Assembly: GCA_038496445.1 (NCBI GenBank)
Contig: JALMLS010000578.1
Location: 124,001-188,000, forward strand
Length of the DNA stretch: 64,000 nt
DNA from: Trichosphaerium sp. ATCC 40318
Taxonomy: Eukaryota; Protista; Tubulinea
Direction: 5' to 3'
Below the pieces are notes generated by a model. That model did not search any database and was not told where the DNA came from. It saw only the letters and a list, made by a program, of their open reading frames with translations. Below, piece after piece: positions 17,990-60,351 of this stretch. Within the stretch, counting starts at the first letter, position 1. Every line of letters starts with the position of its first letter. A program made the translations under genes and the position numbers.

Positions 17990-20900
17990 TCAGAGGTAAG
18001 TGGCCAGTACTCCACCAGTATTTGGGACAAACTTAATTTTTCTTGTTTTCGATGTGCGAAGGTTTTTTTGTACGCATTTCACTAAATTTATCGAATACGT
18101 TTGCCCTGTGCATTCGTAAGACAACACTCTCCGAACATAATGCCAATAATAAAAGAAAATACAAAAGGCTGAGCGCTTACCCCTAATGTTAACATAGACA
18201 GTATGTTTCCCGTTTCTCTTGTTCTTTGAAAACTTTTGGCTCAATATGTCATCGAAAGGCTCCCACCTATTGCCCCACCAATACCACCGACCTACTAGTA
18301 CACTGTATCAGACTATCTCTAAAATAGCGTGCATGCGTGCATACCTTCAGTTTGTTTGTTTGTTTTAGGCCTGTCCTGCACGCCAAACAAAGACATGAAT
18401 CCTTGTGTAATACCAGCTAGAGAGGAACTGTTTGCTTGGGTTTGCTCTTCGGGAGCACGAGCTCCACGCGATATGGTGTGTTGACCATAAATGTGCTCTG
18501 TGTGCGCACTGTCTCTCGTTGGCTGTGCGTTACGCTGACCACGTGCTGGGTTCGGTCTGTTTCTAATATCTTCTATTTTGCTCATTTCAGCACGTGCGCG
18601 TACTACAAGCGTACCTCGTTGTCTACCATTGGATGTTGTTTTCGGTCTTTGTACAGGTGCTTGGCTATCACATGCACGCTAAGGCGTATAAGTATGGAAA
18701 GGGGTTGCATAGTTTTACTTGGTAATCGAGTATACTCCATGATTGCGTGGCTGGTGACACACGGCTGCCTGCAATGCTCCTTCTACTTCCTAAATTGGGA
18801 TTGCCGTAGTGACGCCTATCATGAGTTGTGTGTGGGCGATACTCAGAATACGTTGTTTGACGTGGGTCCAATGTACGAGTTTGTGGTGCGTTGTATCGTT
18901 GAGATCCACCATATTGTGAGTGGTAAGTGTCTTCATGACGCGTATTAAAAGACATTGGTGGTTGTGAATGACTATAACTGGATGGCGCGTTTTCAGTGTA
19001 CGAACCGTCTTCAAAATGAGAAGGGGGATAGGATATAACATCTAAAGTGTCATATTCACGGTCATTGACACGTCTTGTCTCTAGAACAGCGCTTGAGGGC
19101 AACGCCTCGAATGGATCCCATTCGTCAAAGTGTAGAGTGGAAGGATCACTGTCTTGATTGTGTATGGCTTCTCTTTCTACGTGCCTATATGGACGTGACG
19201 CTGGCGGAAGATCTTCATCACTCTCGTTGTAGCGTAGCTCAAAATTCGAAGATTCTGGATAAAGAAAATCAGGCTGTTCCTCCAGCATCCTTTCTCTATT
19301 GTTGTCCTCGTGGTAAACACGTGGCTGTGAATTTCGAGGCATTAAAGTGTGATAAGAATCGTCATGTGGATCAGAGTATTTAGTATCTTCCTCTGGAGAA
19401 TATCCCTGCACATGACTGGAGTCTTCATACTGAGGCGCGAATTGTTCATGGTTTGTCAAGGTACTGCCCGTGCGATTGGCGGCTGTTACTGTTTTTTCTT
19501 CGGGCTGTTTTTGTGCGCTACTCTGAGAAGCTAGCTTGAGCATTGAATCTTTGATATGTTGCGCTGTTATATTCTTTTGAAAGCCAATGATGGCGCGTCT
19601 GACACCACAAGTTACTTTTTTTAAATGACAAAAATTCGAAAAACGTTTTTTTACCACGTGACATAAAACGACAGTATTAATCATGAGTACCTGCATAGTG
19701 GACACGTTGGCGTTTGGTTTTGACCCGCAGCTGTTTCTATTACACGAGTGATACATTCCCTACAAAAGCTATGGTCTACGGTTGTTTTGTTAGCAATACG
19801 TGCGCCCAACGCCGCCAGTTTCCATTTTGTACGTACTACAGAACCCATTATTTTCTTCTGAGGTTATGGACGTTATTTCTTCCATAGGATCACAGCATAT
19901 AGGGCTAGCGTAAGGATTTAGAGTACTGTAAAAGAGAAAGAGAACGAAGGTTATCAGTTCCTCTATCAAACGCACCAATCAAGCTCTTTGATGTGTATAG
20001 TATTAGCCATTTTCTTGTTCCGCTCAGTCCCTCCTTTATTTAAAGAGTGGGAACCAGTTTGGACTGCGATTGAAAATAAATAACTTTTGGGTTTTTTTTA
20101 TTATTAATTTACTATTTCTTTACACCAACTTCAAGAAAGTTTATATTGCACAAAGGTGCTATAACCTTAGCCTTTGTACTAACAAGCTTTCTTACAATTG
20201 CAAAATTACCAGCATAGCATATATTAGTATGTCCATGACGAGCTAAAGTATACATCACTGCCAGTTCCTCCTTCACATACCGCCTACAACCAACATTAAA
20301 AATAAACGCGTAGCCAAGTCAGGGTTAACTTGACAACGTTAGGGCATTGTATTTGGGACCACACGTGCAAAATCGGTAACTATGTTTGAAACTGAAAAAA
20401 GATTGTTTTTCAAAAAAGAATAGTTCCTGACTCTGTTCAAATTCAAATGTTGTTCATACTTTGATAAAGCGGCCCAATCTTTGTGTCTAAAGTCATTCTT
20501 GTTGCCACCAAAGATTTTGACCCATTCGTCAATGACTAAGTCTGCATCCTATTCAATAGTGTTGTCAATATGGGATTTGATCTCATGACTTTGTTGTCAG
20601 TATCGTACACATTTAGGTTCGAGCTCTAAGAGCTCATTAAAGCACTCAAACCAATATGGATCTACTATAATATCCGTGAAGCAGACAAAGTCCCATGTGC
20701 AGTTTTTATTTGAGTGCTCCTTAACTAGCTTTTGTATTTGCTTTTGCATCTTTTTACCTTTTTATTGATTTAGTCAATCAACAACACTTTACCGCCCAAC
20801 CCATACCTTCTACAAGTCCCAATGCCAGGGCAATAGAAGGATCATTTTCTAGAGAAGAAGCACGTGCTGTAAGACGATAAGAAGAATCGGCCTAAGTGAC

Positions 20901-24846: not shown

Positions 24847-27800
24847 ATGGCTGATCCAGGCGAGGATACCTCAACGGAAAAGAAAGTATCGTTTGTAGAG
24901 TACAAGAGCGATGATGATGAAGAAAACCACATCTGGGACCACGTTAGAGTGCGTAAACAGTATTCAGCAGCCATTATCGATCTTTGTCAATTTATAGCCG
25001 ATTGCTTTTTTAATACAGTTGTCATTCCTTGTTTCTAACGCATACAAGGTGAGTGAATCGGTATTAAAGACTAAGAAACGCATGAGAGCCTCATCACGCG
25101 ACATGCTCCTTGATACGCGTCCTATTAACTCAAACAGTAGTAGAAAAGCCAAGGAAACTATTAGTATGTCGTCTGAAGAGAGTTCGTCTGAAAGTGATCT
25201 TGTGTCGTTCAGCGATGATTCAGACGATTCAGAGGATGATATACTACCCACACGATTGGATTTGAGCCGTAGTGTGGAGCAAGAGTCCATACATCTTACT
25301 GGAGGTTTTGCAGATTTGGATTTGGACGATGGTGACGTAGCCCTATCTGATGATTCTGCCGATGAATCTCAGTCCCGGGATTCCAGCAATCATTCAGAGC
25401 CAGCCGTAGAGGAGCTCTCTACTGAATCAGCCGTTGTGGTGTCAGAACACGTGAGCCAAGCGTCATCAGATGATGAAGAAATAGCTGTTCAAATCTTGAG
25501 TTCATCAGAAAAGGAAGACGAAGATAAAGCGCCTACTGATGGCCTTGACAAATTATCAACATCCAACGAGGAACAATCACTAAAGAGTGATACTGTAGAC
25601 GAGGATATCTCAAGCGGGAAAGAGGAAGAGATTAGTATAGAGATTGAGGATGATGACGAAGAGGAAGATGATGAAATTGTACCTCCTGAACCCAAGCCTG
25701 AAATTGCAGATGTTGAGCTGCCCGTTGATGAAATACCGGCTCTCAAGATACTCGACGACCCTACTGATTCTATAGATAGTGATAAGGTAACCACACCTTC
25801 CACTCGACGTTCTAATGCAGAAGGTAAACAACCAAGTTCTACTACAAACCTACTTTATTGGATGTTTTTTTTACCTATCTTAATTTTTACTTTGTTTCAT
25901 TTTGATGTGCATGCGTTTAACCAAAAAAATTAGGAATAGACATTGAACTAAACTATTGCTCTGATGAAGTTATGGAGCAACCTGTGAAAGATAATTCTGT
26001 GGTAAGAACAAAAGAATTGGACCAACAAAAATCTGACTCATTTTAGTCGCCTCAGTTTTCTTCACCGTCCTCAACGTTCGACGAATATTCTTCTGTTGCA
26101 AGTGATGAGGAATTTGCTAATATGAAAAGATCAAAAAGGCTTTCTGTAAAGAGAGGATCTACATTAGAGCGTGCATCTTCAACTCGATCATCAAAAGGTA
26201 GAAAAAGCAAGACGAAGGAACGCAAAAAGAAAAAAAAGCGTCTCAAAGAAAAAACGCCTCCAGTCAATGCCCTACACTTACAATGTGTATGGCGTCGTGC
26301 ATTGGCATATAGACGTGTTTCACAGTTGCGTAAGCAAATGGTAAAGAGAACTCATGTTGTTATTGAAGTGATGGATACGGAGTCAAACTATGTTCAACGT
26401 TTGAAACTTGCATATAATTTATTTTACAAACCTTTGGAGAAACCTTCAGATGACCCTATTGTTCCTCTTACTAAGATCAAACCTATCTTCGATATGGTTA
26501 GAAAAGTCCTTGATGTACACAACCCTATACTCGAGGACTTGAGGGGACAAAGAGATAAGAACCAAGAGAGGGATAGTTGTTGGGATGTTATAGGAGATGT
26601 TTTTTTGCAGCATGAAAAGGCTTTGTTGAAGGTTTATGAAGATTATGCTGTCAATTATGAGGATTTTCTGAAAAACTTGAAGCAGGTCAGGCACTCAACA
26701 CCACGGTATAATACATTCATAAAGGTACGATAAGAATTCATATTTTTTGTTTGTATAAGGAGCTTACAAGTTGGTACATAGAAAGCGGAGTCTAATCCAG
26801 CTTTAAATTATGCGGATTTGGAATCTTTGTTGTTTTTACCAATTCAACGGATTCCACAATACAATCTTCTCCTTGCAGATTTGGTTAAGGCTACTCCTGG
26901 GTATCATCGTGACTACAAATCTGTAATTGCTGCATTCGCTATGTCTAAGCGGCTCGGTAATGCTGTCAATGAAAAAAAGCGACAAGTGGAGAGTGTTAGA
27001 CGTGTCATTGAGATTGCTGCAAAACTAAACAATTTTGAGGTACAATATGATAACAGCCTTCATAGACCTCTTATTCTAACATTTATACCAAAGGGCCTTG
27101 CAACTGAACAACGTCGTTTCGTGTATGAAGGCAATTTTAAGCAAAGTACAGATGAAGGAACAAAAGATCATGTCATTTTTATGTTTAACGATATTATACT
27201 CTTGTCAAAGAAACTGTCACCAGTGGCCTATCACGTTGACACATACGCTTACTTTGGACGTGCTTTTGTGTATCCTAAATCAGGTAAACAAAGACACGAG
27301 TTTGTAGAAAAGTTAACCCTGTTTTTTAGATGACAAGCAATTTGAACTGACTCTAAAAAAGTCCGTATTCGTTTTATCATGCATATCGGCTTTGCAGTGC
27401 TCAACATTTTGCGATTTGTTCCAAGAGACGAAAATCAGTGCTATAAAATTAGAGAAGAATATGACACGTGTTCGTGCACAACAAGTGAACAGTGAATTCT
27501 CATTGTCGGTTCGTCTGGCAAGAGCAAAGTCATCACAAGACGTACCTAATTTAAGCAAAGTGTTAACCAGTTACGTTGTTTTCCAATATACTCTGAGATC
27601 ACGTGATTCTAACTTTTTATCTTCTTCTTAGATGTGGACTTTTCTCAGCTATCTGAATCACGTATTGCTGACCGCCAAGCTCGTAAACGTGACTATCCAG
27701 ACGTTACATTTCCAAGCCCTACAATTGTTTCTACAAGGCGATCAGCAAGAAACAAGTCACCACTTGGTAACGTCGCTCAAAATATGCCACAACACTTTAA

Positions 27801-46442: not shown

Positions 46443-48756
46443 TTAAATGCAGTTAGACTCTGTTAGAATATTTCCTTTACATTCTTGGTACTTGCTAACT
46501 GATTTGTGTAGTTCGGCTAGAACACTAGGACTTGTTACAGACACCAAGTTCTTCATCTAGAAAACGTTGTTAAGATATGAACCTAAAGTTACAAAACATG
46601 TGATTGGCGCACCTGATATGGATCAACAGCTATGTCGTATAGCTCTCTGAACTCGATAGAAGACTCTGTCCATGTCCATGTATGATCGAATTCAATGTAT
46701 ACAAGATTTGATGTTTCGTTAAGAACACGCAACGCACGCCAAGAGTTTGAAGATACATCATCGACAAACCAACAGTTTCCTATTTTTCAAAAAATGTCAA
46801 GTTCTAAACAAACTCAAAGGTACTCACCATCACCAACACCTTTACCAAGTACACATTCAGTAGCATTAACTGGTGATCTTGGACCTTTTCCCTCGTTCCC
46901 GTGGTAAGTTCCATCAGGCACCTAACTTTCTTAGCAAGAACACATGCATGTCAAGTTCGAATAGATAACGGAAACCTGTTTCTCAAACATACCCATATCC
47001 TTGAGTGATCGTTGTAGTATGTTCCTACTGATTTGTATTCAATCAAGAACTCCTTTCTCCATTCGGCTGCATACTTTTGTTTTTCGGAAGCATCCAAAGG
47101 TTTAAAATAAGGGTTATCAGCACTAACAAAGAATGGAGCGAGACTCTTTCCTAAAAATATCAAACGTCAAAAAAGCAAACCCAGCATCACGTGACATTAT
47201 CACTAGATAAAAACTATGTCATACCGTCCATAAATTTTGGTTTTGTGACTCCTGCAAGATCAAGTAAAGTTGGTGTGAAGTCGACATTACCACTCACATG
47301 CTTAACTTTGGTACCTGGCTTAATACCAGGACCACGTACAATATAAGGTATACGAATATCTGTTTCATAAGGTTCCTGTTTACTTGTACCAACACGCCAT
47401 TGACCTAATTTGTAGCCCTAGAAAAAGAACAACATTAACCAAAAAAGCGTTATGTGTATGAAAAAAAGTTTCGAGCTTTTTGTAAACGCACGTGATCACT
47501 GGAGTAGAATATGTATGTATCATCAAGTACATCCAATTTTTTCAATGTGTCAATCACAGCCGCTACTACTTCGTCTACGGTTACAAGTGCGCTCCATCTG
47601 TCCTTCATGTGTTGTGTTTCCCATGATGCGACGTTATCATCAAAAGGAGGATTTTGTCTGATGAGTTGATGCTTGTCAGGAGATTCAACATTCCAGTTCG
47701 GCGTTCTTGGAAATGTTAAGTTCTCGAAAGGATGGTTTTGAACCCAAGGCGCAGGTGTAGCAGGGTAATGTGGAGCGTGAGGACCAATATATGCAAAGAA
47801 AGGTTTGCCACCTGATGACTTTTGTTAGCGACTATAATCACCCGAAAAGCAACTTGTTGTGCGTACTGTTTGCTATTTCATTGATCCAAGCAATTGATCT
47901 GTTTCCTAGTTGAGTTGTTTGGTATGTTTCAGGCTTCATCTCTAACGTTTCAATGTGTTTAGAACCATTTGGGTATTTTATAAAGTATTTTTTTGAGTAA
48001 AAGTCGCTGAAGTCGCAAGGAGAGCTTATTGTAGTCATTCCAGCATCTTTTTCCTTTCCACAAAAGTACCTAGCTTGGTCGTTTGTAACTTTACCAAACA
48101 CTCCTTTCAATAAAAGGTAAGGGAGGGAGAAAAGAGCAAAAAAAAAAAAAGGAAGAAAAGTCATGCGAAAAAGACATGGAAAATTACAAGTTTGATTTCA
48201 CGTTGGAGTGCTAATACTTGCCTGTATTATAACCAGCGCTCTCTAGGAGGCCGAACATACTACCAGTGACATTGAAGACATTTTCTTCAGCATTTATGTG
48301 CATACAAGACCCTGACGGAGCGCCAATATTGTGGTAGTACCGGCCTACAAAAAGTGTAAAAAAAACAATTTCTCTTCGGTTTTAACGTTTTGTAGCTAAT
48401 CACGTGCCTGTTATAAATTCAGTTCTAGAAGGGCAGCAAATGGGTGTAGCGACAAAAAAGTTTTCAAAGTAAGCTCCTCCGTCTATTAAAAGCTTCGTTG
48501 TTTCTGGCATTGCCTAAAAAACAGTTATAACTCTAACACGTGATATGAAGAAAAAAGAAACTCTTTAGGGACGTTGTTTAAATTAAATTTTAGAGCTAAT
48601 AAAACGAACCTCGAGTGATCCAAACTCTGAATACGCATGTGGGTCTGTCCCTAGCTGAATATCTTGGTCGTCAGTTAGAATAAACACGAAGTTTGGCTTC
48701 TTAGCCGTTAACACTACGAAAACGACAAAGAGACAAACACAGAGCAGTGTCTTCAT
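46443..48756 (-). CDS. Secreted sulfatase, N-acetylglucosamine-6-sulfatase-like (formylglycine-dependent), multi-exon
   Basis: Signal peptide, KKPNFVFILTDDQD, CCPSRTEFIT|GRYYHN (CxPxR), IGPHAPH, YETDIRIPYIVRGPG. 3' end approximate. Confidence 0.93.
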
Positions 48757-49127
48757 AGTTCTAGTTGGTTTTTGTTTTAAAATAAGTATGGCGTAAGTGA
48801 CAAGCCTTGGCTTATTCCACGTGCGTAACTTTTTGTGAACCGTCTTAATATAAAAAATTCTTGACAACTGTAGCAGCCATAGGACAGTTCATACATGTAT
48901 TGTTATGAATAAACAATTTAAGCTTGCTAGGGATCTGCTAAAAGTGGTAATGAACTCACATTCTAGAAAATACAAGTAACACCTGAATGAGACATTCTCA
49001 GCCTGACATATGTGGCATAAGTGTATGTCAGGCTACTGGTATGATCTATCTTAACATTTGTTTGATTAAGATAGTCGAGATGTTTGTTTGGTTTACGGTG
49101 GTCAAACTTTTTTGTTGTGAGCGCAGC

Positions 49128-51452
49128 ATGGGCAACTTCAAATCTAAAAAAAAGCCTCAATATCAATATCAAAGACCTGTTAGAAAGAATCCTACAAGTG
49201 TACTAGTCGCAGGTATGACATTGGTAGCTCTATTTATAGATAACTACACAATTTTGTTGATATTCGCAGAAATAACATTAAAACTTAGGACCTAGCATGA
49301 GTGGTACTGTTCGGAATAGTTTTAGAGTTAATGTGATTTACAGAAACGTGTTTAGGGAAATCAAAGCTTGTATTACAGTTTAGACTCTTAACAGAGGAAA
49401 AATTAACCCCTCGGGAGCATAATGATTACTCTAGCAAGGGTATATCATTTGTACAGAGGTTCTTGCAAGTTTTATCTACACAACCTGAATTTTCAACTTT
49501 GGACAGCGTAAGATACATCTAAAGCACTAATTAGTAATACGTGACATAAAATAGACAACACAAGATATGGTGAAGTCGTTTTTAGATATGTCTGATGACA
49601 CGTGGACACAACAACTCATTGACGCTTTAAAACTGTATTTTTTTGTTAAGTCAATCTGTTTTGTGAACTAAGTCTTGGGCTAGGTTGAAAGACAACAAAG
49701 AATTAATGGACATGATTTTGTATACTGACTTTAAATGTATCGTTTTATCCTGTAAGGACAACATGAAAGCGTGAGTGGATTGTTAACCTTATGAGATTTG
49801 TTTTAATTTTTTTTTCTAAGTTACATTGATTCAATTTGCTCTCAAACTGCAGATTCTTTCGTTTTGAGTTATGAACAAAGGCTTAACTATCATTCACGTC
49901 CTTTCAACATTAATGAGATAGAGGGTGAAGTTGATGGTACTGACTATAGATTGGGGGATGTTGGAGGTTTGTCTTTGCAAGTCTTGTGTTTTTGACTTTT
50001 TTCTTTTCTTCTATGTCAAATCCTTCTAGGAAGTCGTACTGAGAGAAGACAGTGGATATATTTTTCTTCTGGATTGGATTGTATTATCTATTGTATGTCT
50101 CTTGATAGGTAAGTATCCTCATGTGTTTTCTTGAATTTTTCTTACTATGTTTAACCCTTTCGCTCAAAAAAAGTTACTTGTACTACCTTTGGGAAGATGA
50201 TACAATTAATGCGTTTGAAGAGTCATTGGGATTACTTGAAGGTCTAATACAATGTTTGTATTTCAATGCGCCTGTTGTCCTTGTAATGACAAAACTTGAT
50301 ATGTTTGACAAAGAAATACAAAAGCGTCCAGAAAAGTTTAGAGAGTTCTTCCCTAGCTACAAAGGTACTAACCGGTTTACCCACGTAACTTATATTTTTG
50401 CGATAGGAACAATGAATTTATACGATTGTGCCATGCACGTGTTCAATGTCATTTGTTCAAGGCTAGAAAACTCAACATGTTTCCTTGGGGCTACCTTTGC
50501 ATCTTTGATAGAAAACCCTAATGCAATATCCTATATTTTAAGACAAACTCCAGAGAAAGTAGGCTTCTTTAGTGATCCAGGAAAACAATATTCACCTTGT
50601 ATGTATAGTAGCAAACCTTTAATATTTACACTAATTCCTTCATGTCTAGTATCAGCCATCCGGCCTTTCATGTTTCCAATAAAAACATCGACACTGCTAC
50701 TTGATGTAGCAAAGTTAAGCCAAGAACTATATGCCAACATGAACACAGATAATGCGTTTATTTGTTCCATACGCAAATACGGATCTCGTAAAAATAAAAC
50801 CAAAGCGTCAGTTCTAAAATACCTCAGAAGATTATACAAATCAAACACTCAAGACTTTGCTATTAAGACTGGAACAGATTGTATTAAATGTCACAAGGTA
50901 AGCTCTATTTTTGCTTCTACTGACATAATTCAACTAGGCAATATTGATGTGCCGAGCTACATTCTTTGAAGGAGCTATTCTTTCCAACAATCTTGGGACG
51001 GATGGTGACGGTGACACAAGCATTACTTAGAAGAAGATGCTTTCATTATCAGAACTTTTATTCAGTTTGCATACTTTGATGACATACCTTCTAATCTTGA
51101 TTTGGATGCTCTATTGAATCTCTTAAAATTCTCAGATAAGTATTGTATAGATTCTCTACAATCTGTTGTGATATTCTATGTATTTAATCATAGTACACGT
51201 GATAAGATTACTAACAGTGACAATGATTATTATCTTTCAAAAATGAGCGAATTTCTTGATTATGGATTATTGGGATGCAACTCGTTCATCATAAACAATA
51301 TAACTTCGTGGTTTCTCTATCAGGAATCCAAAACACTTAACAGGTTTCTTAAAAAACACAAGAAAACTGTTGCAGTGAAGTATCTCTTAGATCAAACAGT
51401 TCTGGTGCTACAAGAAACTAATGAACCTTCAAAAAAGAAAATATTCAAATAG
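49128..51452 (+). CDS. Divergent heterotrimeric G-protein alpha subunit fused to a C-terminal BTB/POZ domain, multi-exon
   Basis: MGNFKS myristoylation motif. P-loop VLVA|GPSMS|GKSKL via a 15-nt microexon (49289-49303). DVGG|SRTERRQW, CIIYCMSLDS, LWEDDTINAFEESLGLLE, VVLVMTKLD. BTB: DFAIKTG..IKCHK|AILMCRATFFE..FIQFAYFD..LLKFSDKYCIDSL. Confidence 0.82.
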
Positions 51453-59352: not shown

Positions 59353-60351
59353 ATGGCATCGAAACGCGCCTCACTTGAGGCATACACGGATACCACAGAC
59401 TTGTTTTCGCTACCTTTGGAGATACTCTTGAATATTATCGTGAGTAATAACCTATCATGGCAAGATTTAGGTTCATTACAACAATCAAACCATTTTCTGA
59501 AGGATACAATCCAAGCTGACGAAGAATACATCTATAAACGTTTATACCACCAGAAATGGGGTTCTAACGCTCAAGAAATAGAGAACCTTGTTCATGAACT
59601 AGCAGAGAATGAGTTAAAGCAATATTTAAACGAATCCTACTCAACATACTGCCGTGTAACGAAAAAGTGGATACGACATACAATCGAAATGCCATCGACT
59701 TTGTATAATCTCAACGCAATCACGTGGAAAGAAAAGTATAGAAATAAACTTGTTCCAAATGTCATAGCGGAGCTGAGTTGTGATAAAACAAAGATTCATA
59801 GAGGAGATACAGTAACATTCAAACTCACACTTGAGAATATCGGAAAAAAAGAAGAAACAGTATTTCTCGGTCATGGCTATAGCCTTGATGAATGTTCCGT
59901 TATTCAAACTGGTAAAGCTTTTTTTATTTGGAAGCCTACTGTCAAAGATCCTGATGGGTATCTCAACAACTACAGATATCATGATAGCAGAAGGTACAGG
60001 CGTGGGACAATGATGGTTGATTTTACTGAAACTTTGAAACCAGGAGATAAGGAAACATATGAGATACCTTTCCTTTTCAATGCATCAATAGAACCCAAAG
60101 ACAGGTCAGGCCAATACCGGCGCAGTCCCGCTAGAAGAAACCATATTGCTCATCGTGGTACCTTTTCTCTTGAAGGAAAAATCTATCATACTTATGTCGC
60201 AAATGATAAGACACCTGATGTGTTTCCTCTTCAAGTATTTGTTAGAGTCAATACACTTAAAGAAAGGCACAAGATGCACTTGAATACTGTTTATGGGCAT
60301 TGTTCACTAGTCAATAGTAACATTGTAAACCTTACTATGCACAAGCAGTAA
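59353..60351 (+). CDS. Intronless F-box protein with C-terminal Ig-like (DUF11/CARDB-like) domain
   Basis: LFSLPLEILLNIIVSNNLSWQDLGSLQQSNHFL..IYKRLYHQKW; LSCDKTKIHRGDTVTFKLTLENIG..TLKPGDKETYEIPF. Single 332-aa ORF. Confidence 0.8.
   Translation: MASKRASLEAYTDTTDLFSLPLEILLNIIVSNNLSWQDLGSLQQSNHFLKDTIQADEEYIYKRLYHQKWGSNAQEIENLVHELAENELKQYLNESYSTYCRVTKKWIRHTIEMPSTLYNLNAITWKEKYRNKLVPNVIAELSCDKTKIHRGDTVTFKLTLENIGKKEETVFLGHGYSLDECSVIQTGKAFFIWKPTVKDPDGYLNNYRYHDSRRYRRGTMMVDFTETLKPGDKETYEIPFLFNASIEPKDRSGQYRRSPARRNHIAHRGTFSLEGKIYHTYVANDKTPDVFPLQVFVRVNTLKERHKMHLNTVYGHCSLVNSNIVNLTMHKQ

What the first reader, a model, noticed from the sequence alone, without database searches (positions are those of the whole stretch)
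49128..51452. G-alpha-BTB fusion with degenerate GTPase catalytic residues
Seen: myristoylation motif MGNFKS and a GxxxxGKS P-loop. Switch II reads DVGGSR rather than DVGGQR (catalytic Gln to Ser). Switch I reads YHSRPFNINE with no clear R-x-x-T. G4 is TKLD rather than NKxD. An in-frame BTB domain follows. Known: loss of the switch II Gln or switch I Arg abolishes G-alpha GTP hydrolysis, and BTB domains recruit Cullin-3; RhoBTB is the precedent for a GTPase-BTB adaptor. Inference: a membrane-anchored, constitutively GTP-bound or pseudo-GTPase Cul3 substrate adaptor that could degrade G-protein partners (G-beta-gamma, RGS, GPCRs). I am not aware of this fusion being described.
Basis: partly seen in the sequence, partly recalled or inferred. 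Interest (0 to 1): 0.82.

Follow-up and report, generated by a model that had tools for sequence, protein, structure and literature searches.

The report
Dead G-alpha fused to BTB, frame-broken
An amoeba gene joins a badly degenerated copy of a G-protein alpha subunit to a BTB domain, a combination I found in no paper, but in this copy the BTB reading frame is broken by one missing base, so it is either a recently disabled copy or carries an assembly error.

Summary
The scan found the same family before on other DNA of this genome.

**G-alpha part.** The spliced model aligns collinearly with a G-alpha profile from the P-loop through the helical domain to the FPxYxG region (112-120 bits).
- P-loop AETCLGKS, not GxxxxGKS
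- switch I Arg to His and Thr to Pro
- DVGGSR in switch II
- TKLD in place of NKxD
- no recognisable beta6/TCAT/alpha5

**The join.** The last G-alpha motifs and the start of the BTB lie in one open 724-nt exon, so no splice is needed to join them.

**BTB part.** Support is moderate. The N-terminal third gives Pfam BTB at 17.7 bits (E 0.0042, below the family cut-off). The rest gives language-model hits to BTB/BACK clusters (0.94).

**The break.** The BTB frame breaks at 51025/26 and a TAG follows at 51028-30. A close, expressed relative has one extra G there and stays in frame. As assembled, the protein ends inside the BTB.

**RNA.** Evidence is thin: two introns are confirmed exactly, and other contigs are unspliced.

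**Function.** Cullin-3 adaptor function is untested.

The parts
49128..49212 (+). Exon 1: MGNFKSKKKPQYQYQRPVRKNPTSVLVA plus the first base of the next codon. It carries the myristoylation-type motif MGxxxS followed by a Lys run.
   Evidence: The donor G|GTATGA is predicted only, and no RNA contig covers it. In-frame ATGs lie upstream from 48987.
49213..49343 (+). Intron 1 (131 nt, GT..AG), predicted. It is the longest intron of the gene.
   Evidence: It is needed because exon 2 has no ATG and a stop lies just upstream in its frame.
49344..49507 (+). Exon 2: degenerate P-loop (A)ETCLGKS, alpha1 and the start of the helical domain.
   Evidence: Aligned to the G-alpha HMM from the GKS onward. The donor at 49507 is confirmed by spliced contig X2 with 0 mismatches.
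49555..49634 (+). Exon 3: helical domain.
   Evidence: Both flanking introns (49508-49554 and 49635-49683) are seen in spliced cDNA contigs of X2 (exact) and X3.
49684..49770 (+). Exon 4: helical domain.
   Evidence: The acceptor is confirmed. The donor at 49770 is predicted. The intron 49771-49820 is retained in contigs X1 and X2. The HMM prefers this join over the alternative 49752-49852.
49821..49966 (+). Exon 5: end of the helical domain, degenerate switch I (NYHSRPFNINE, 49885-49917), beta strands and DVGG.
50030..50108 (+). Exon 6: SRTERRQW (switch II with Gln replaced by Ser) and beta4.
   Evidence: Pfam G-alpha 20.3 bits on this exon alone. Intron 50109-50173 is seen in a spliced X2 contig of about 95% identity.
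50174..50897 (+). Exon 7 (724 nt, one open frame): G-alpha alpha3-beta5, TKLD (50289-50300), the FPSYKG region, a linker of about 125 residues and the first 15 BTB residues (50853-50897). This is the G-alpha-to-BTB junction.
   Evidence: Pfam G-alpha 41.9 bits, E 9e-11, on residues 4-74. ORF. Two candidate in-frame introns (50365-50406 and 50599-50649) would not change the frame.
50898..50937 (+). Intron 7 (40 nt, GT..AG).
   Evidence: Seen in a spliced contig of X3, 91-97% identical and probably from a close relative.
50938..51025 (+). Exon 8, first part: AILMCRATFFEGAILSNNLGTDGDGDTSI, the BTB N-terminal third.
   Evidence: The spliced 61-residue stretch (50802-50897 plus 50938-51024) hits Pfam BTB at 17.7 bits, E 0.0042, profile positions 9-44 of 110.
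51025..51030 (+). Frame break. The codon at 51025-26 lacks one base, and the original frame reaches TAG at 51028-51030.
   Evidence: The X3 contig has an extra G after 51025 and stays in frame.
51027..51452 (+). Exon 8, second part, in the shifted frame: LEEDAFIIRTFIQFAYFDD...KYCIDSLQ, which is the rest of the BTB. It continues into a helical BACK/3-box-like tail, 141 codons in all plus TAG.
   Evidence: Atlas features score 0.94 with 190/256 shared. The top clusters are BTB, with BACK and SPOP-type BACK also present. The open frame of 141 codons is shown.

Best explanation
**What it is.** This is one copy of a lineage-specific amoeba gene family. A G-protein alpha subunit has lost its switch chemistry and is fused at its C-terminus, through a linker of about 125 residues, to a BTB domain with a BACK-like helical tail.

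**Shown here**
- The exon structure.
- The collinear G-alpha homology, including the helical domain.
- The loss or change of every nucleotide-handling motif except GKS and DxxG.
- The G-alpha-to-BTB junction inside a single open exon.
- A one-base frame break inside the BTB.

**Inferred mechanism**
- The intact form of such a protein is tethered to membranes by N-myristoylation plus a Lys patch.
- It uses the frozen G-alpha fold as a nucleotide-independent binding module.
- It uses the BTB/BACK part to dimerise and probably to recruit Cullin-3, as RhoBTB does with a dead Rho domain.

**This copy.** As assembled it would stop after 485 residues, in the middle of the BTB. The 141 codons downstream are still open and still BTB-like. 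The break is therefore either very recent (a young pseudogene or a null allele) or an assembly error.
For: - **Gene model.** Spliced cDNA contigs confirm introns 49508-49554 and 49635-49683 exactly. Contigs from close relatives confirm 50109-50173 and 50898-50937.
- **G-alpha homology.** A G-alpha HMM built from P0001, P0002, P0009 and P0013 hits residues 30-288 at 112 bits, E 1.6e-36. With a candidate intron removed the hit reaches 119.9 bits. Pfam G-alpha gives 41.9 and 20.3 bits on single exons.
- **Junction.** It lies in one ORF at 50121-50969.
- **BTB.** Pfam BTB on the N-terminal third and Atlas BTB/BACK clusters at 0.94 on the remainder. These are two non-overlapping pieces in the right order.
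- **Frame break.** Seen. A relative with an extra G after 51025 stays in frame.
- **Sense-strand cDNA.** A SMART template-switch oligo is attached to the 5' end of a + strand contig at 49687.
- **Family.** Earlier scan notes describe the same family on other pieces of this genome.
Against: - No RNA contig spans 50625-50834, so the junction is supported by the ORF only.
- Several cDNA contigs are unspliced (introns 4, 5 and 6 retained). That fits a poorly processed or weakly expressed transcript, or genomic DNA carry-over.
- The BTB call stays below Pfam's cut-off (17.7 against 20.5 bits). Neither half hits a solved BTB structure by sequence. The fragment models gave no BTB fold match.
- The exhaustive protein search found no relative that shares the linker or the BTB. 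Conservation of the fusion outside this genome is therefore not shown.
- Cullin-3 binding, myristoylation and nucleotide binding are untested.
Confidence: 0.72

Rival explanations
1. The frameshift is an assembly or consensus error. The gene is intact and encodes a protein of about 600-626 residues with a complete BTB/BACK module, expressed at a low level.
For: - The 141 codons after the break remain open in a 35% GC sequence and still score as BTB/BACK.
- The closest expressed relative has exactly one more base at that point.
- No other disabling lesion is seen in the eight exons.
Against: - The missing base is not in a homopolymer (ATTA-CTTAG), which is the usual site of long-read errors.
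- The contig with the extra G differs at 12 other positions nearby. It is therefore not the same allele and cannot arbitrate.
Confidence: 0.4
2. The locus is a decaying pseudogene copy of the family. The degenerate GTPase motifs, retained introns and frameshift all reflect loss of function, and no protein of use is made.
For: - A frameshift and a premature TAG.
- Introns 4-6 are retained in cDNA contigs.
- Only 13 weak hits came from 1.84 billion representatives, so the G-alpha part is unusually divergent.
- The C-terminal beta6/G5/alpha5 part of the G-alpha is not recognisable.
Against: - Apart from the single break, all exons are open and all splice sites are canonical.
- Long open frames lie on both sides of the break.
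- Earlier notes report crippled motifs in other family members as well (unchecked). The degeneracy therefore looks like a family trait and not decay of this copy.
Confidence: 0.3
3. G-alpha and BTB are made from separate transcripts or genes that merely abut.
For: - No RNA contig spans 50625-50834.
- There is an internal ATG in the linker (ANMNTD).
Against: - There is no stop codon in frame anywhere between the G4 motif and the BTB start. It is one 282-codon ORF, and the two candidate internal introns are both multiples of three.
- The G-alpha part has no stop of its own.
- The same layout is reported in several paralogues.
Confidence: 0.05
4. The BTB serves only for oligomerisation (as in KCTD12-type or ion-channel T1 domains) and not for Cullin-3 recruitment. 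The intact family members would then be dimeric membrane scaffolds rather than ubiquitin-ligase adaptors.
For: - BTB domains are generic dimerisation and oligomerisation modules (established knowledge).
- No Cullin-3 contact motif could be tested here.
- The loop where the Cul3-contact motif lies in SPOP-type BTBs is the most variable stretch between this copy and its relative (mismatch cluster 50985-51041).
Against: Atlas neighbours of the C-terminal part include BACK and SPOP-type BACK clusters, the helical extension typical of Cul3 adaptors.
Confidence: 0.3

Closest known systems
RhoBTB proteins (atypical Rho GTPase, tandem BTB, C-terminal domain), from my own knowledge
   Same: - An N-terminal GTPase-fold domain that has lost normal nucleotide cycling, followed by a BTB.
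- The BTB binds Cullin-3.
- RhoBTB proteins are also present in Amoebozoa (Dictyostelium RacA).
   Different: - The GTPase here descends from heterotrimeric G-alpha, with its helical-domain insert aligned, not from Rho.
- Only one BTB is recognisable in this copy.
- The N-terminus carries a myristoylation-type motif.
- No sequence relationship beyond the domain families.
ARF-family GTPase-BTB fusions (Vargova et al. 2021, PMC8358228)
   Same: Lineage-specific fusions of an ARF-superfamily GTPase domain to BTB (and BACK) domains. The authors read them as recurrent recruitment of GTPases into ubiquitin circuits. G-alpha derives from an Arf-like ancestor.
   Different: That survey explicitly excluded G-alpha proteins. 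None of its examples carries the G-alpha helical domain.
KCTD5/Cullin-3 ligase for G-beta-gamma (PMC10348674; bioRxiv 10.1101/2023.09.20.558662)
   Same: A BTB protein that links Cullin-3 to a heterotrimeric G-protein component.
   Different: - KCTD5 has a T1-type pentameric BTB and no GTPase domain.
- Here the substrate-binding role would fall to a G-alpha fold.
- The alphaN helix that binds G-beta-gamma appears to be missing.
Plant extra-large G proteins (XLG), from my own knowledge
   Same: G-alpha-like domains with substituted catalytic and nucleotide-binding residues, joined to an extra domain. They act largely independently of nucleotide.
   Different: - The XLG extension is N-terminal (NLS and Cys-rich region), not a C-terminal BTB.
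- XLGs still bind G-beta-gamma.
SPOP/MATH-BTB adaptors
   Same: A BTB followed by a short BACK/3-box helical tail. Atlas neighbours include SPOP-type BACK.
   Different: The substrate-binding module would be a G-alpha fold instead of MATH. Sequence similarity is too low for any PDB hit.

Membership tests
G-alpha (Pfam PF00503) | Profile match over the Ras-like domain, with the all-helical domain inserted between G1 and switch I | tested here: met
   A local HMM of four G-alphas aligns residues 30-288 without a break, about 120 residues of helical domain included, at 112 bits. Pfam gives 41.9 and 20.3 bits on two exons scanned apart, each below the 48.8 cut-off on its own.
G-alpha (Pfam PF00503) | P-loop GxGESGKST | tested here: not met
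   The motif reads AETCLGKSK after splicing. Only GKS is kept.
G-alpha (Pfam PF00503) | Switch I RxxTxGI with the catalytic Arg and the Mg-binding Thr | tested here: not met
   The profile columns r-v-r-t-v-G-i are matched by H-S-R-P-F-N-I.
G-alpha (Pfam PF00503) | Switch II DVGGQR with the catalytic Gln | tested here: not met
   The motif reads DVGGSR. DxxG is kept and Gln is replaced by Ser.
G-alpha (Pfam PF00503) | Guanine-specificity motifs NKxD and TCAT | tested here: not met
   The motif reads TKLD (Asn replaced by Thr). The profile alignment stops before beta6/TCAT/alpha5 in every splice variant tried.
BTB/POZ (Pfam PF00651) | Profile match at or above the gathering score | tested here: inconclusive
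   The N-terminal third scores 17.7 bits, E 0.0042, against a cut-off of 20.5, and BTB is the only family hit. The C-terminal part gives no Pfam hit, but its Atlas features score 0.94 to BTB/BACK clusters. The whole domain could not be scanned as one piece: an intron and the frame break leave it without a single reference.
Cullin-3 substrate adaptor | Cul3-contact loop motif and 3-box/BACK helices, and physical binding to the Cul3 N-terminal domain | not testable with these tools
   The only hint is BACK-type Atlas neighbours. Fold searches on the fragment returned generic helical matches.
N-myristoylated protein | Gly at position 2 of the translated product, with Ser/Thr at position 6 | tested here: inconclusive
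   MGNFKS fits the motif. The frame is open upstream with ATGs from 48987, and no 5' RNA end is known.

The most novel reading that the evidence does not exclude
Amoebae of this lineage have turned heterotrimeric G-alpha into a family of membrane-tethered, nucleotide-independent substrate receptors for Cullin-3 ligases. This would be a G-alpha counterpart of RhoBTB, marking GPCR-pathway partners (receptors, RGS proteins or effectors that recognise the G-alpha fold) for ubiquitylation. The present locus would be a functional member whose frameshift is an assembly error.
Probability: 0.2. Interest if true: 0.75.

Novelty: new variant of a known kind. Interest (0 to 1): 0.48.

Why it matters
GTPase-BTB fusions are known for Rho (RhoBTB) and for some ARF-family members. 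I found no description of one built on a heterotrimeric G-alpha. If the family is functional, the G-alpha fold can be reused as a nucleotide-independent recognition module, wired directly to a ubiquitin ligase. That would be a new way to regulate G-protein pathways.

This copy adds one useful fact to the earlier findings on the same genome. Here the G-alpha and the BTB start share a single exon, so the fusion does not depend on an unproven splice. The copy also warns that some family members may be broken or mis-assembled.

Tried and rejected
**Searches for relatives**
- A word-index protein search with exon 7 and with the post-break part found nothing. The length window of that tool would also hide full-length kin.
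- An exhaustive phmmer of exon 7 against 1.84 billion representatives gave only 13 weak hits. Apart from P0004 they match only the G-alpha stretch (about residues 2-96), and every one scanned with Pfam there is an ordinary G-alpha. P0004 (10 short stretches in the linker, weak peptidase hit only) looks like low complexity. None reaches the BTB.
- A search of earlier findings by sequence was blank.
- tblastn found no paralogue inside this window.

**Structure**
- AlphaFold of the post-break part gave pLDDT 66, all helical. Exon 7 gave pLDDT 44.7.
- Foldseek on the PDB, the ESM Atlas shape search and VIA-align wide returned only generic helical matches. They carry no information for or against a BTB.
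- phmmer against PDB sequences found no BTB for either half.

**Ways around the frame break**
- I looked for a splice that would bypass the stop. No GT in the required phase lies before 51028, and the relative's contig is collinear there. Rejected.
- Programmed -1 frameshifting is rejected because there is no slippery heptamer at ATT-ACT-TAG.

**Alternative splice models**
- The alternative intron 4 (49752-49852) scores lower and splits the HMM hit.
- Retaining intron 4 destroys the frame.

- I did not scan the joined BTB of about 100 residues as one string. It has no reference (an intron plus the break), and I did not type it in.

**Papers**
- The Anantharaman et al. 2011 survey of G-alpha architectures (PMC3396428) is not held in the library. 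I could not check whether it lists this fusion.

Full report
**What is there.** The window is AT-rich eukaryotic DNA at 35-44% GC. Earlier notes of the scan attribute it to an amoeba. Three-frame translation and cDNA contigs laid on the stretch give an eight-exon gene on the + strand:
- E1 49128-49212
- E2 49344-49507
- E3 49555-49634
- E4 49684-49770
- E5 49821-49966
- E6 50030-50108
- E7 50174-50897
- E8 50938-51452

All seven introns are GT..AG. Six are 40-65 nt long and intron 1 is 131 nt.

**RNA evidence.**
- One contig of run X2 has 0 mismatches and is spliced at 49507/49555 and at 49634/49684. A contig of X3 shares the second joint.
- The joints 50108/50174 and 50897/50938 are seen in contigs that are only about 95% and 91-97% identical. 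These probably come from close relatives.
- Contigs of X1 are about 99% identical and unspliced over 49687-49861 and 49846-50624.
- One X1 contig carries a SMART template-switch oligo at the 5' end of the + strand. It therefore derives from sense-strand cDNA, but from an incompletely processed or truncated molecule.
- Nothing covers 48900-49472 or 50625-50834.
- Expression is thus shown only weakly, and splicing only for part of the gene.

**The G-alpha part.**
- Pfam recognises G-alpha in E6 (20.3 bits) and in the first 74 residues of E7 (41.9 bits, E 9e-11). The N-terminal exons scanned apart give nothing.
- I built an HMM from four ordinary G-alphas returned by the exhaustive search (P0001 C-terminal part, P0002, P0009, P0013). 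I scored the spliced model with it. One collinear alignment runs from the GKS of the P-loop, through about 120 residues of helical domain, switch I, switch II and G4, to FPSYKG (residues 30-288, 112 bits, E 1.6e-36). This validates the exon joins, including the predicted intron 4. The alternative donor scores lower, and retaining the intron wrecks the frame.
- The motifs read as follows:
  - P-loop AETCLGKS, where the canonical motif is GAGESGKS.
  - Switch I H-S-R-P-F-N-I, where the profile has r-v-r-t-v-G-i. The catalytic Arg is His, the Mg-binding Thr is Pro and the Gly is Asn.
  - Switch II DVGGSR.
  - G4 TKLD.
- The beta6/TCAT/alpha5 segment is not recognisable in any splice variant.
- The N-terminus before beta1 is only 23 residues long and contains three prolines. 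The alphaN helix that holds G-beta-gamma in canonical G-alphas is therefore most likely absent; this is read from the sequence plus established structural knowledge.
- Only 13 of 1.84 billion representative proteins reach E 0.001 against E7. The best is 34% identical over 70 residues. This is a very divergent G-alpha. From the motif losses I infer a pseudo-GTPase that probably binds nucleotide poorly or not at all, not a GTP-locked switch.

**The junction.**
- E7 is a single open frame, within the ORF at 50121-50969 of 282 codons, one of the longest in the window.
- It contains the G-alpha alpha3-beta5-G4 region, a linker of about 125 residues with no recognisable domain, and the first 15 residues of the BTB (DFAIKTGTDCIKCHK).
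- Two intron-like stretches inside E7 are both multiples of three: 50365-50406 (GTACTAAC...AG) and 50599-50649 (GTATGT...CTAG). Removing the first raises the HMM score by 6 bits. The frame from G-alpha to BTB is the same either way.
- In this copy the fusion therefore does not hang on a splice. Earlier follow-ups of paralogues had left that point open.

**The BTB.**
- The spliced 61 residues spanning E7/E8 give BTB as the only Pfam hit (17.7 bits, E 0.0042, profile positions 9-44 of 110). This is just under the 20.5-bit cut-off.
- The 141 residues after the break give no Pfam hit. Their language-model features match BTB clusters at 0.94 (190/256 features, 20 BTB hits). The neighbours include BACK and SPOP-type BACK.
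- Two adjacent, non-overlapping pieces point to the same family in the right order. I take the BTB as about 90% likely, and the helical tail as BACK/3-box-like with less certainty.
- Structure prediction of the fragments and four fold searches gave nothing specific.

**The break.**
- In the E8 frame the sequence runs AGC ATT ACT TAG, with the stop at 51028-30. The BTB continues as TTA GAA GAA GAT (LEED...) one base out of register.
- The X3 contig uses the same 40-nt intron. It has an extra G after 51025, giving AGC ATT AGC TTA GAA, and stays in frame. It differs at 12 other nearby positions and diverges completely upstream of 50835. It is therefore a relative, not this allele.
- No intron or slippery site can bypass the stop.
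- The downstream 141 codons are still open and still BTB-like. The lesion is therefore either very young or an assembly error, and I cannot tell which.
- As assembled, the product would end at residue 485 with a third of a BTB.

**Mechanism and comparison.**
- For an intact family member I infer three elements:
  - a myristoyl-plus-lysine membrane anchor;
  - a nucleotide-independent G-alpha fold as a binding module;
  - a BTB/BACK module that dimerises and probably recruits Cullin-3.
- This is the logic of RhoBTB, and of the ARF-BTB fusions noted by Vargova et al. (PMC8358228).
- KCTD5/Cul3 shows that BTB ligases do act on G-protein subunits (PMC10348674).
- The missing alphaN and the blocked alpha5 C-terminus argue against G-beta-gamma or receptor coupling in the canonical way.
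- I found no paper describing a G-alpha-BTB fusion. The 2011 survey by Anantharaman et al. could not be read.

**Verdict.**
- It is a new variant of the GTPase-BTB theme. The scan has already seen it on other pieces of this genome (s1-372485, s1-390482, s1-378518).
- This copy is the most degenerate kind of member, and it is frame-broken as assembled.

Noticed in passing
window 46951-48867, minus strand: A divergently oriented, intron-split sulfatase gene lies upstream. One exon (47453-47608) hits Pfam Sulfatase at 30.8 bits. The first exon appears to start with a signal-peptide-like MKTLLCVCLF near 48756. That leaves about 370 nt for two divergent promoters.
   Followed up: partly
window 48987-49127: The ORF that contains MGNFKS is open upstream with three further in-frame ATGs (first at 48987). 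The encoded stretch is hydrophobic. If the transcript started that far upstream, the protein would not begin with Met-Gly.
   Followed up: no
window 50985-51041: All differences between the window and the spliced X3 contig cluster in 57 nt that encode the Gly/Asp-rich BTB loop (10 substitutions plus the indel). The flanks are identical. This suggests a fast-evolving loop, gene conversion between paralogues, or a chimeric contig.
   Followed up: no
window 49771-49820, 49967-50029, 50109-50173: Three introns are retained in cDNA-derived contigs of runs X1 and X2, while introns 2 and 3 are cleanly spliced in X2 and X3. This could be inefficient splicing of this gene or genomic DNA carry-over in small single-cell-type libraries.
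   Followed up: partly
window 59353-60351 (+), 18668-19756 (-), 25019-25933 (+): The other long ORFs of the window (300-360 codons) have no Pfam hit at E 0.001.
   Followed up: no
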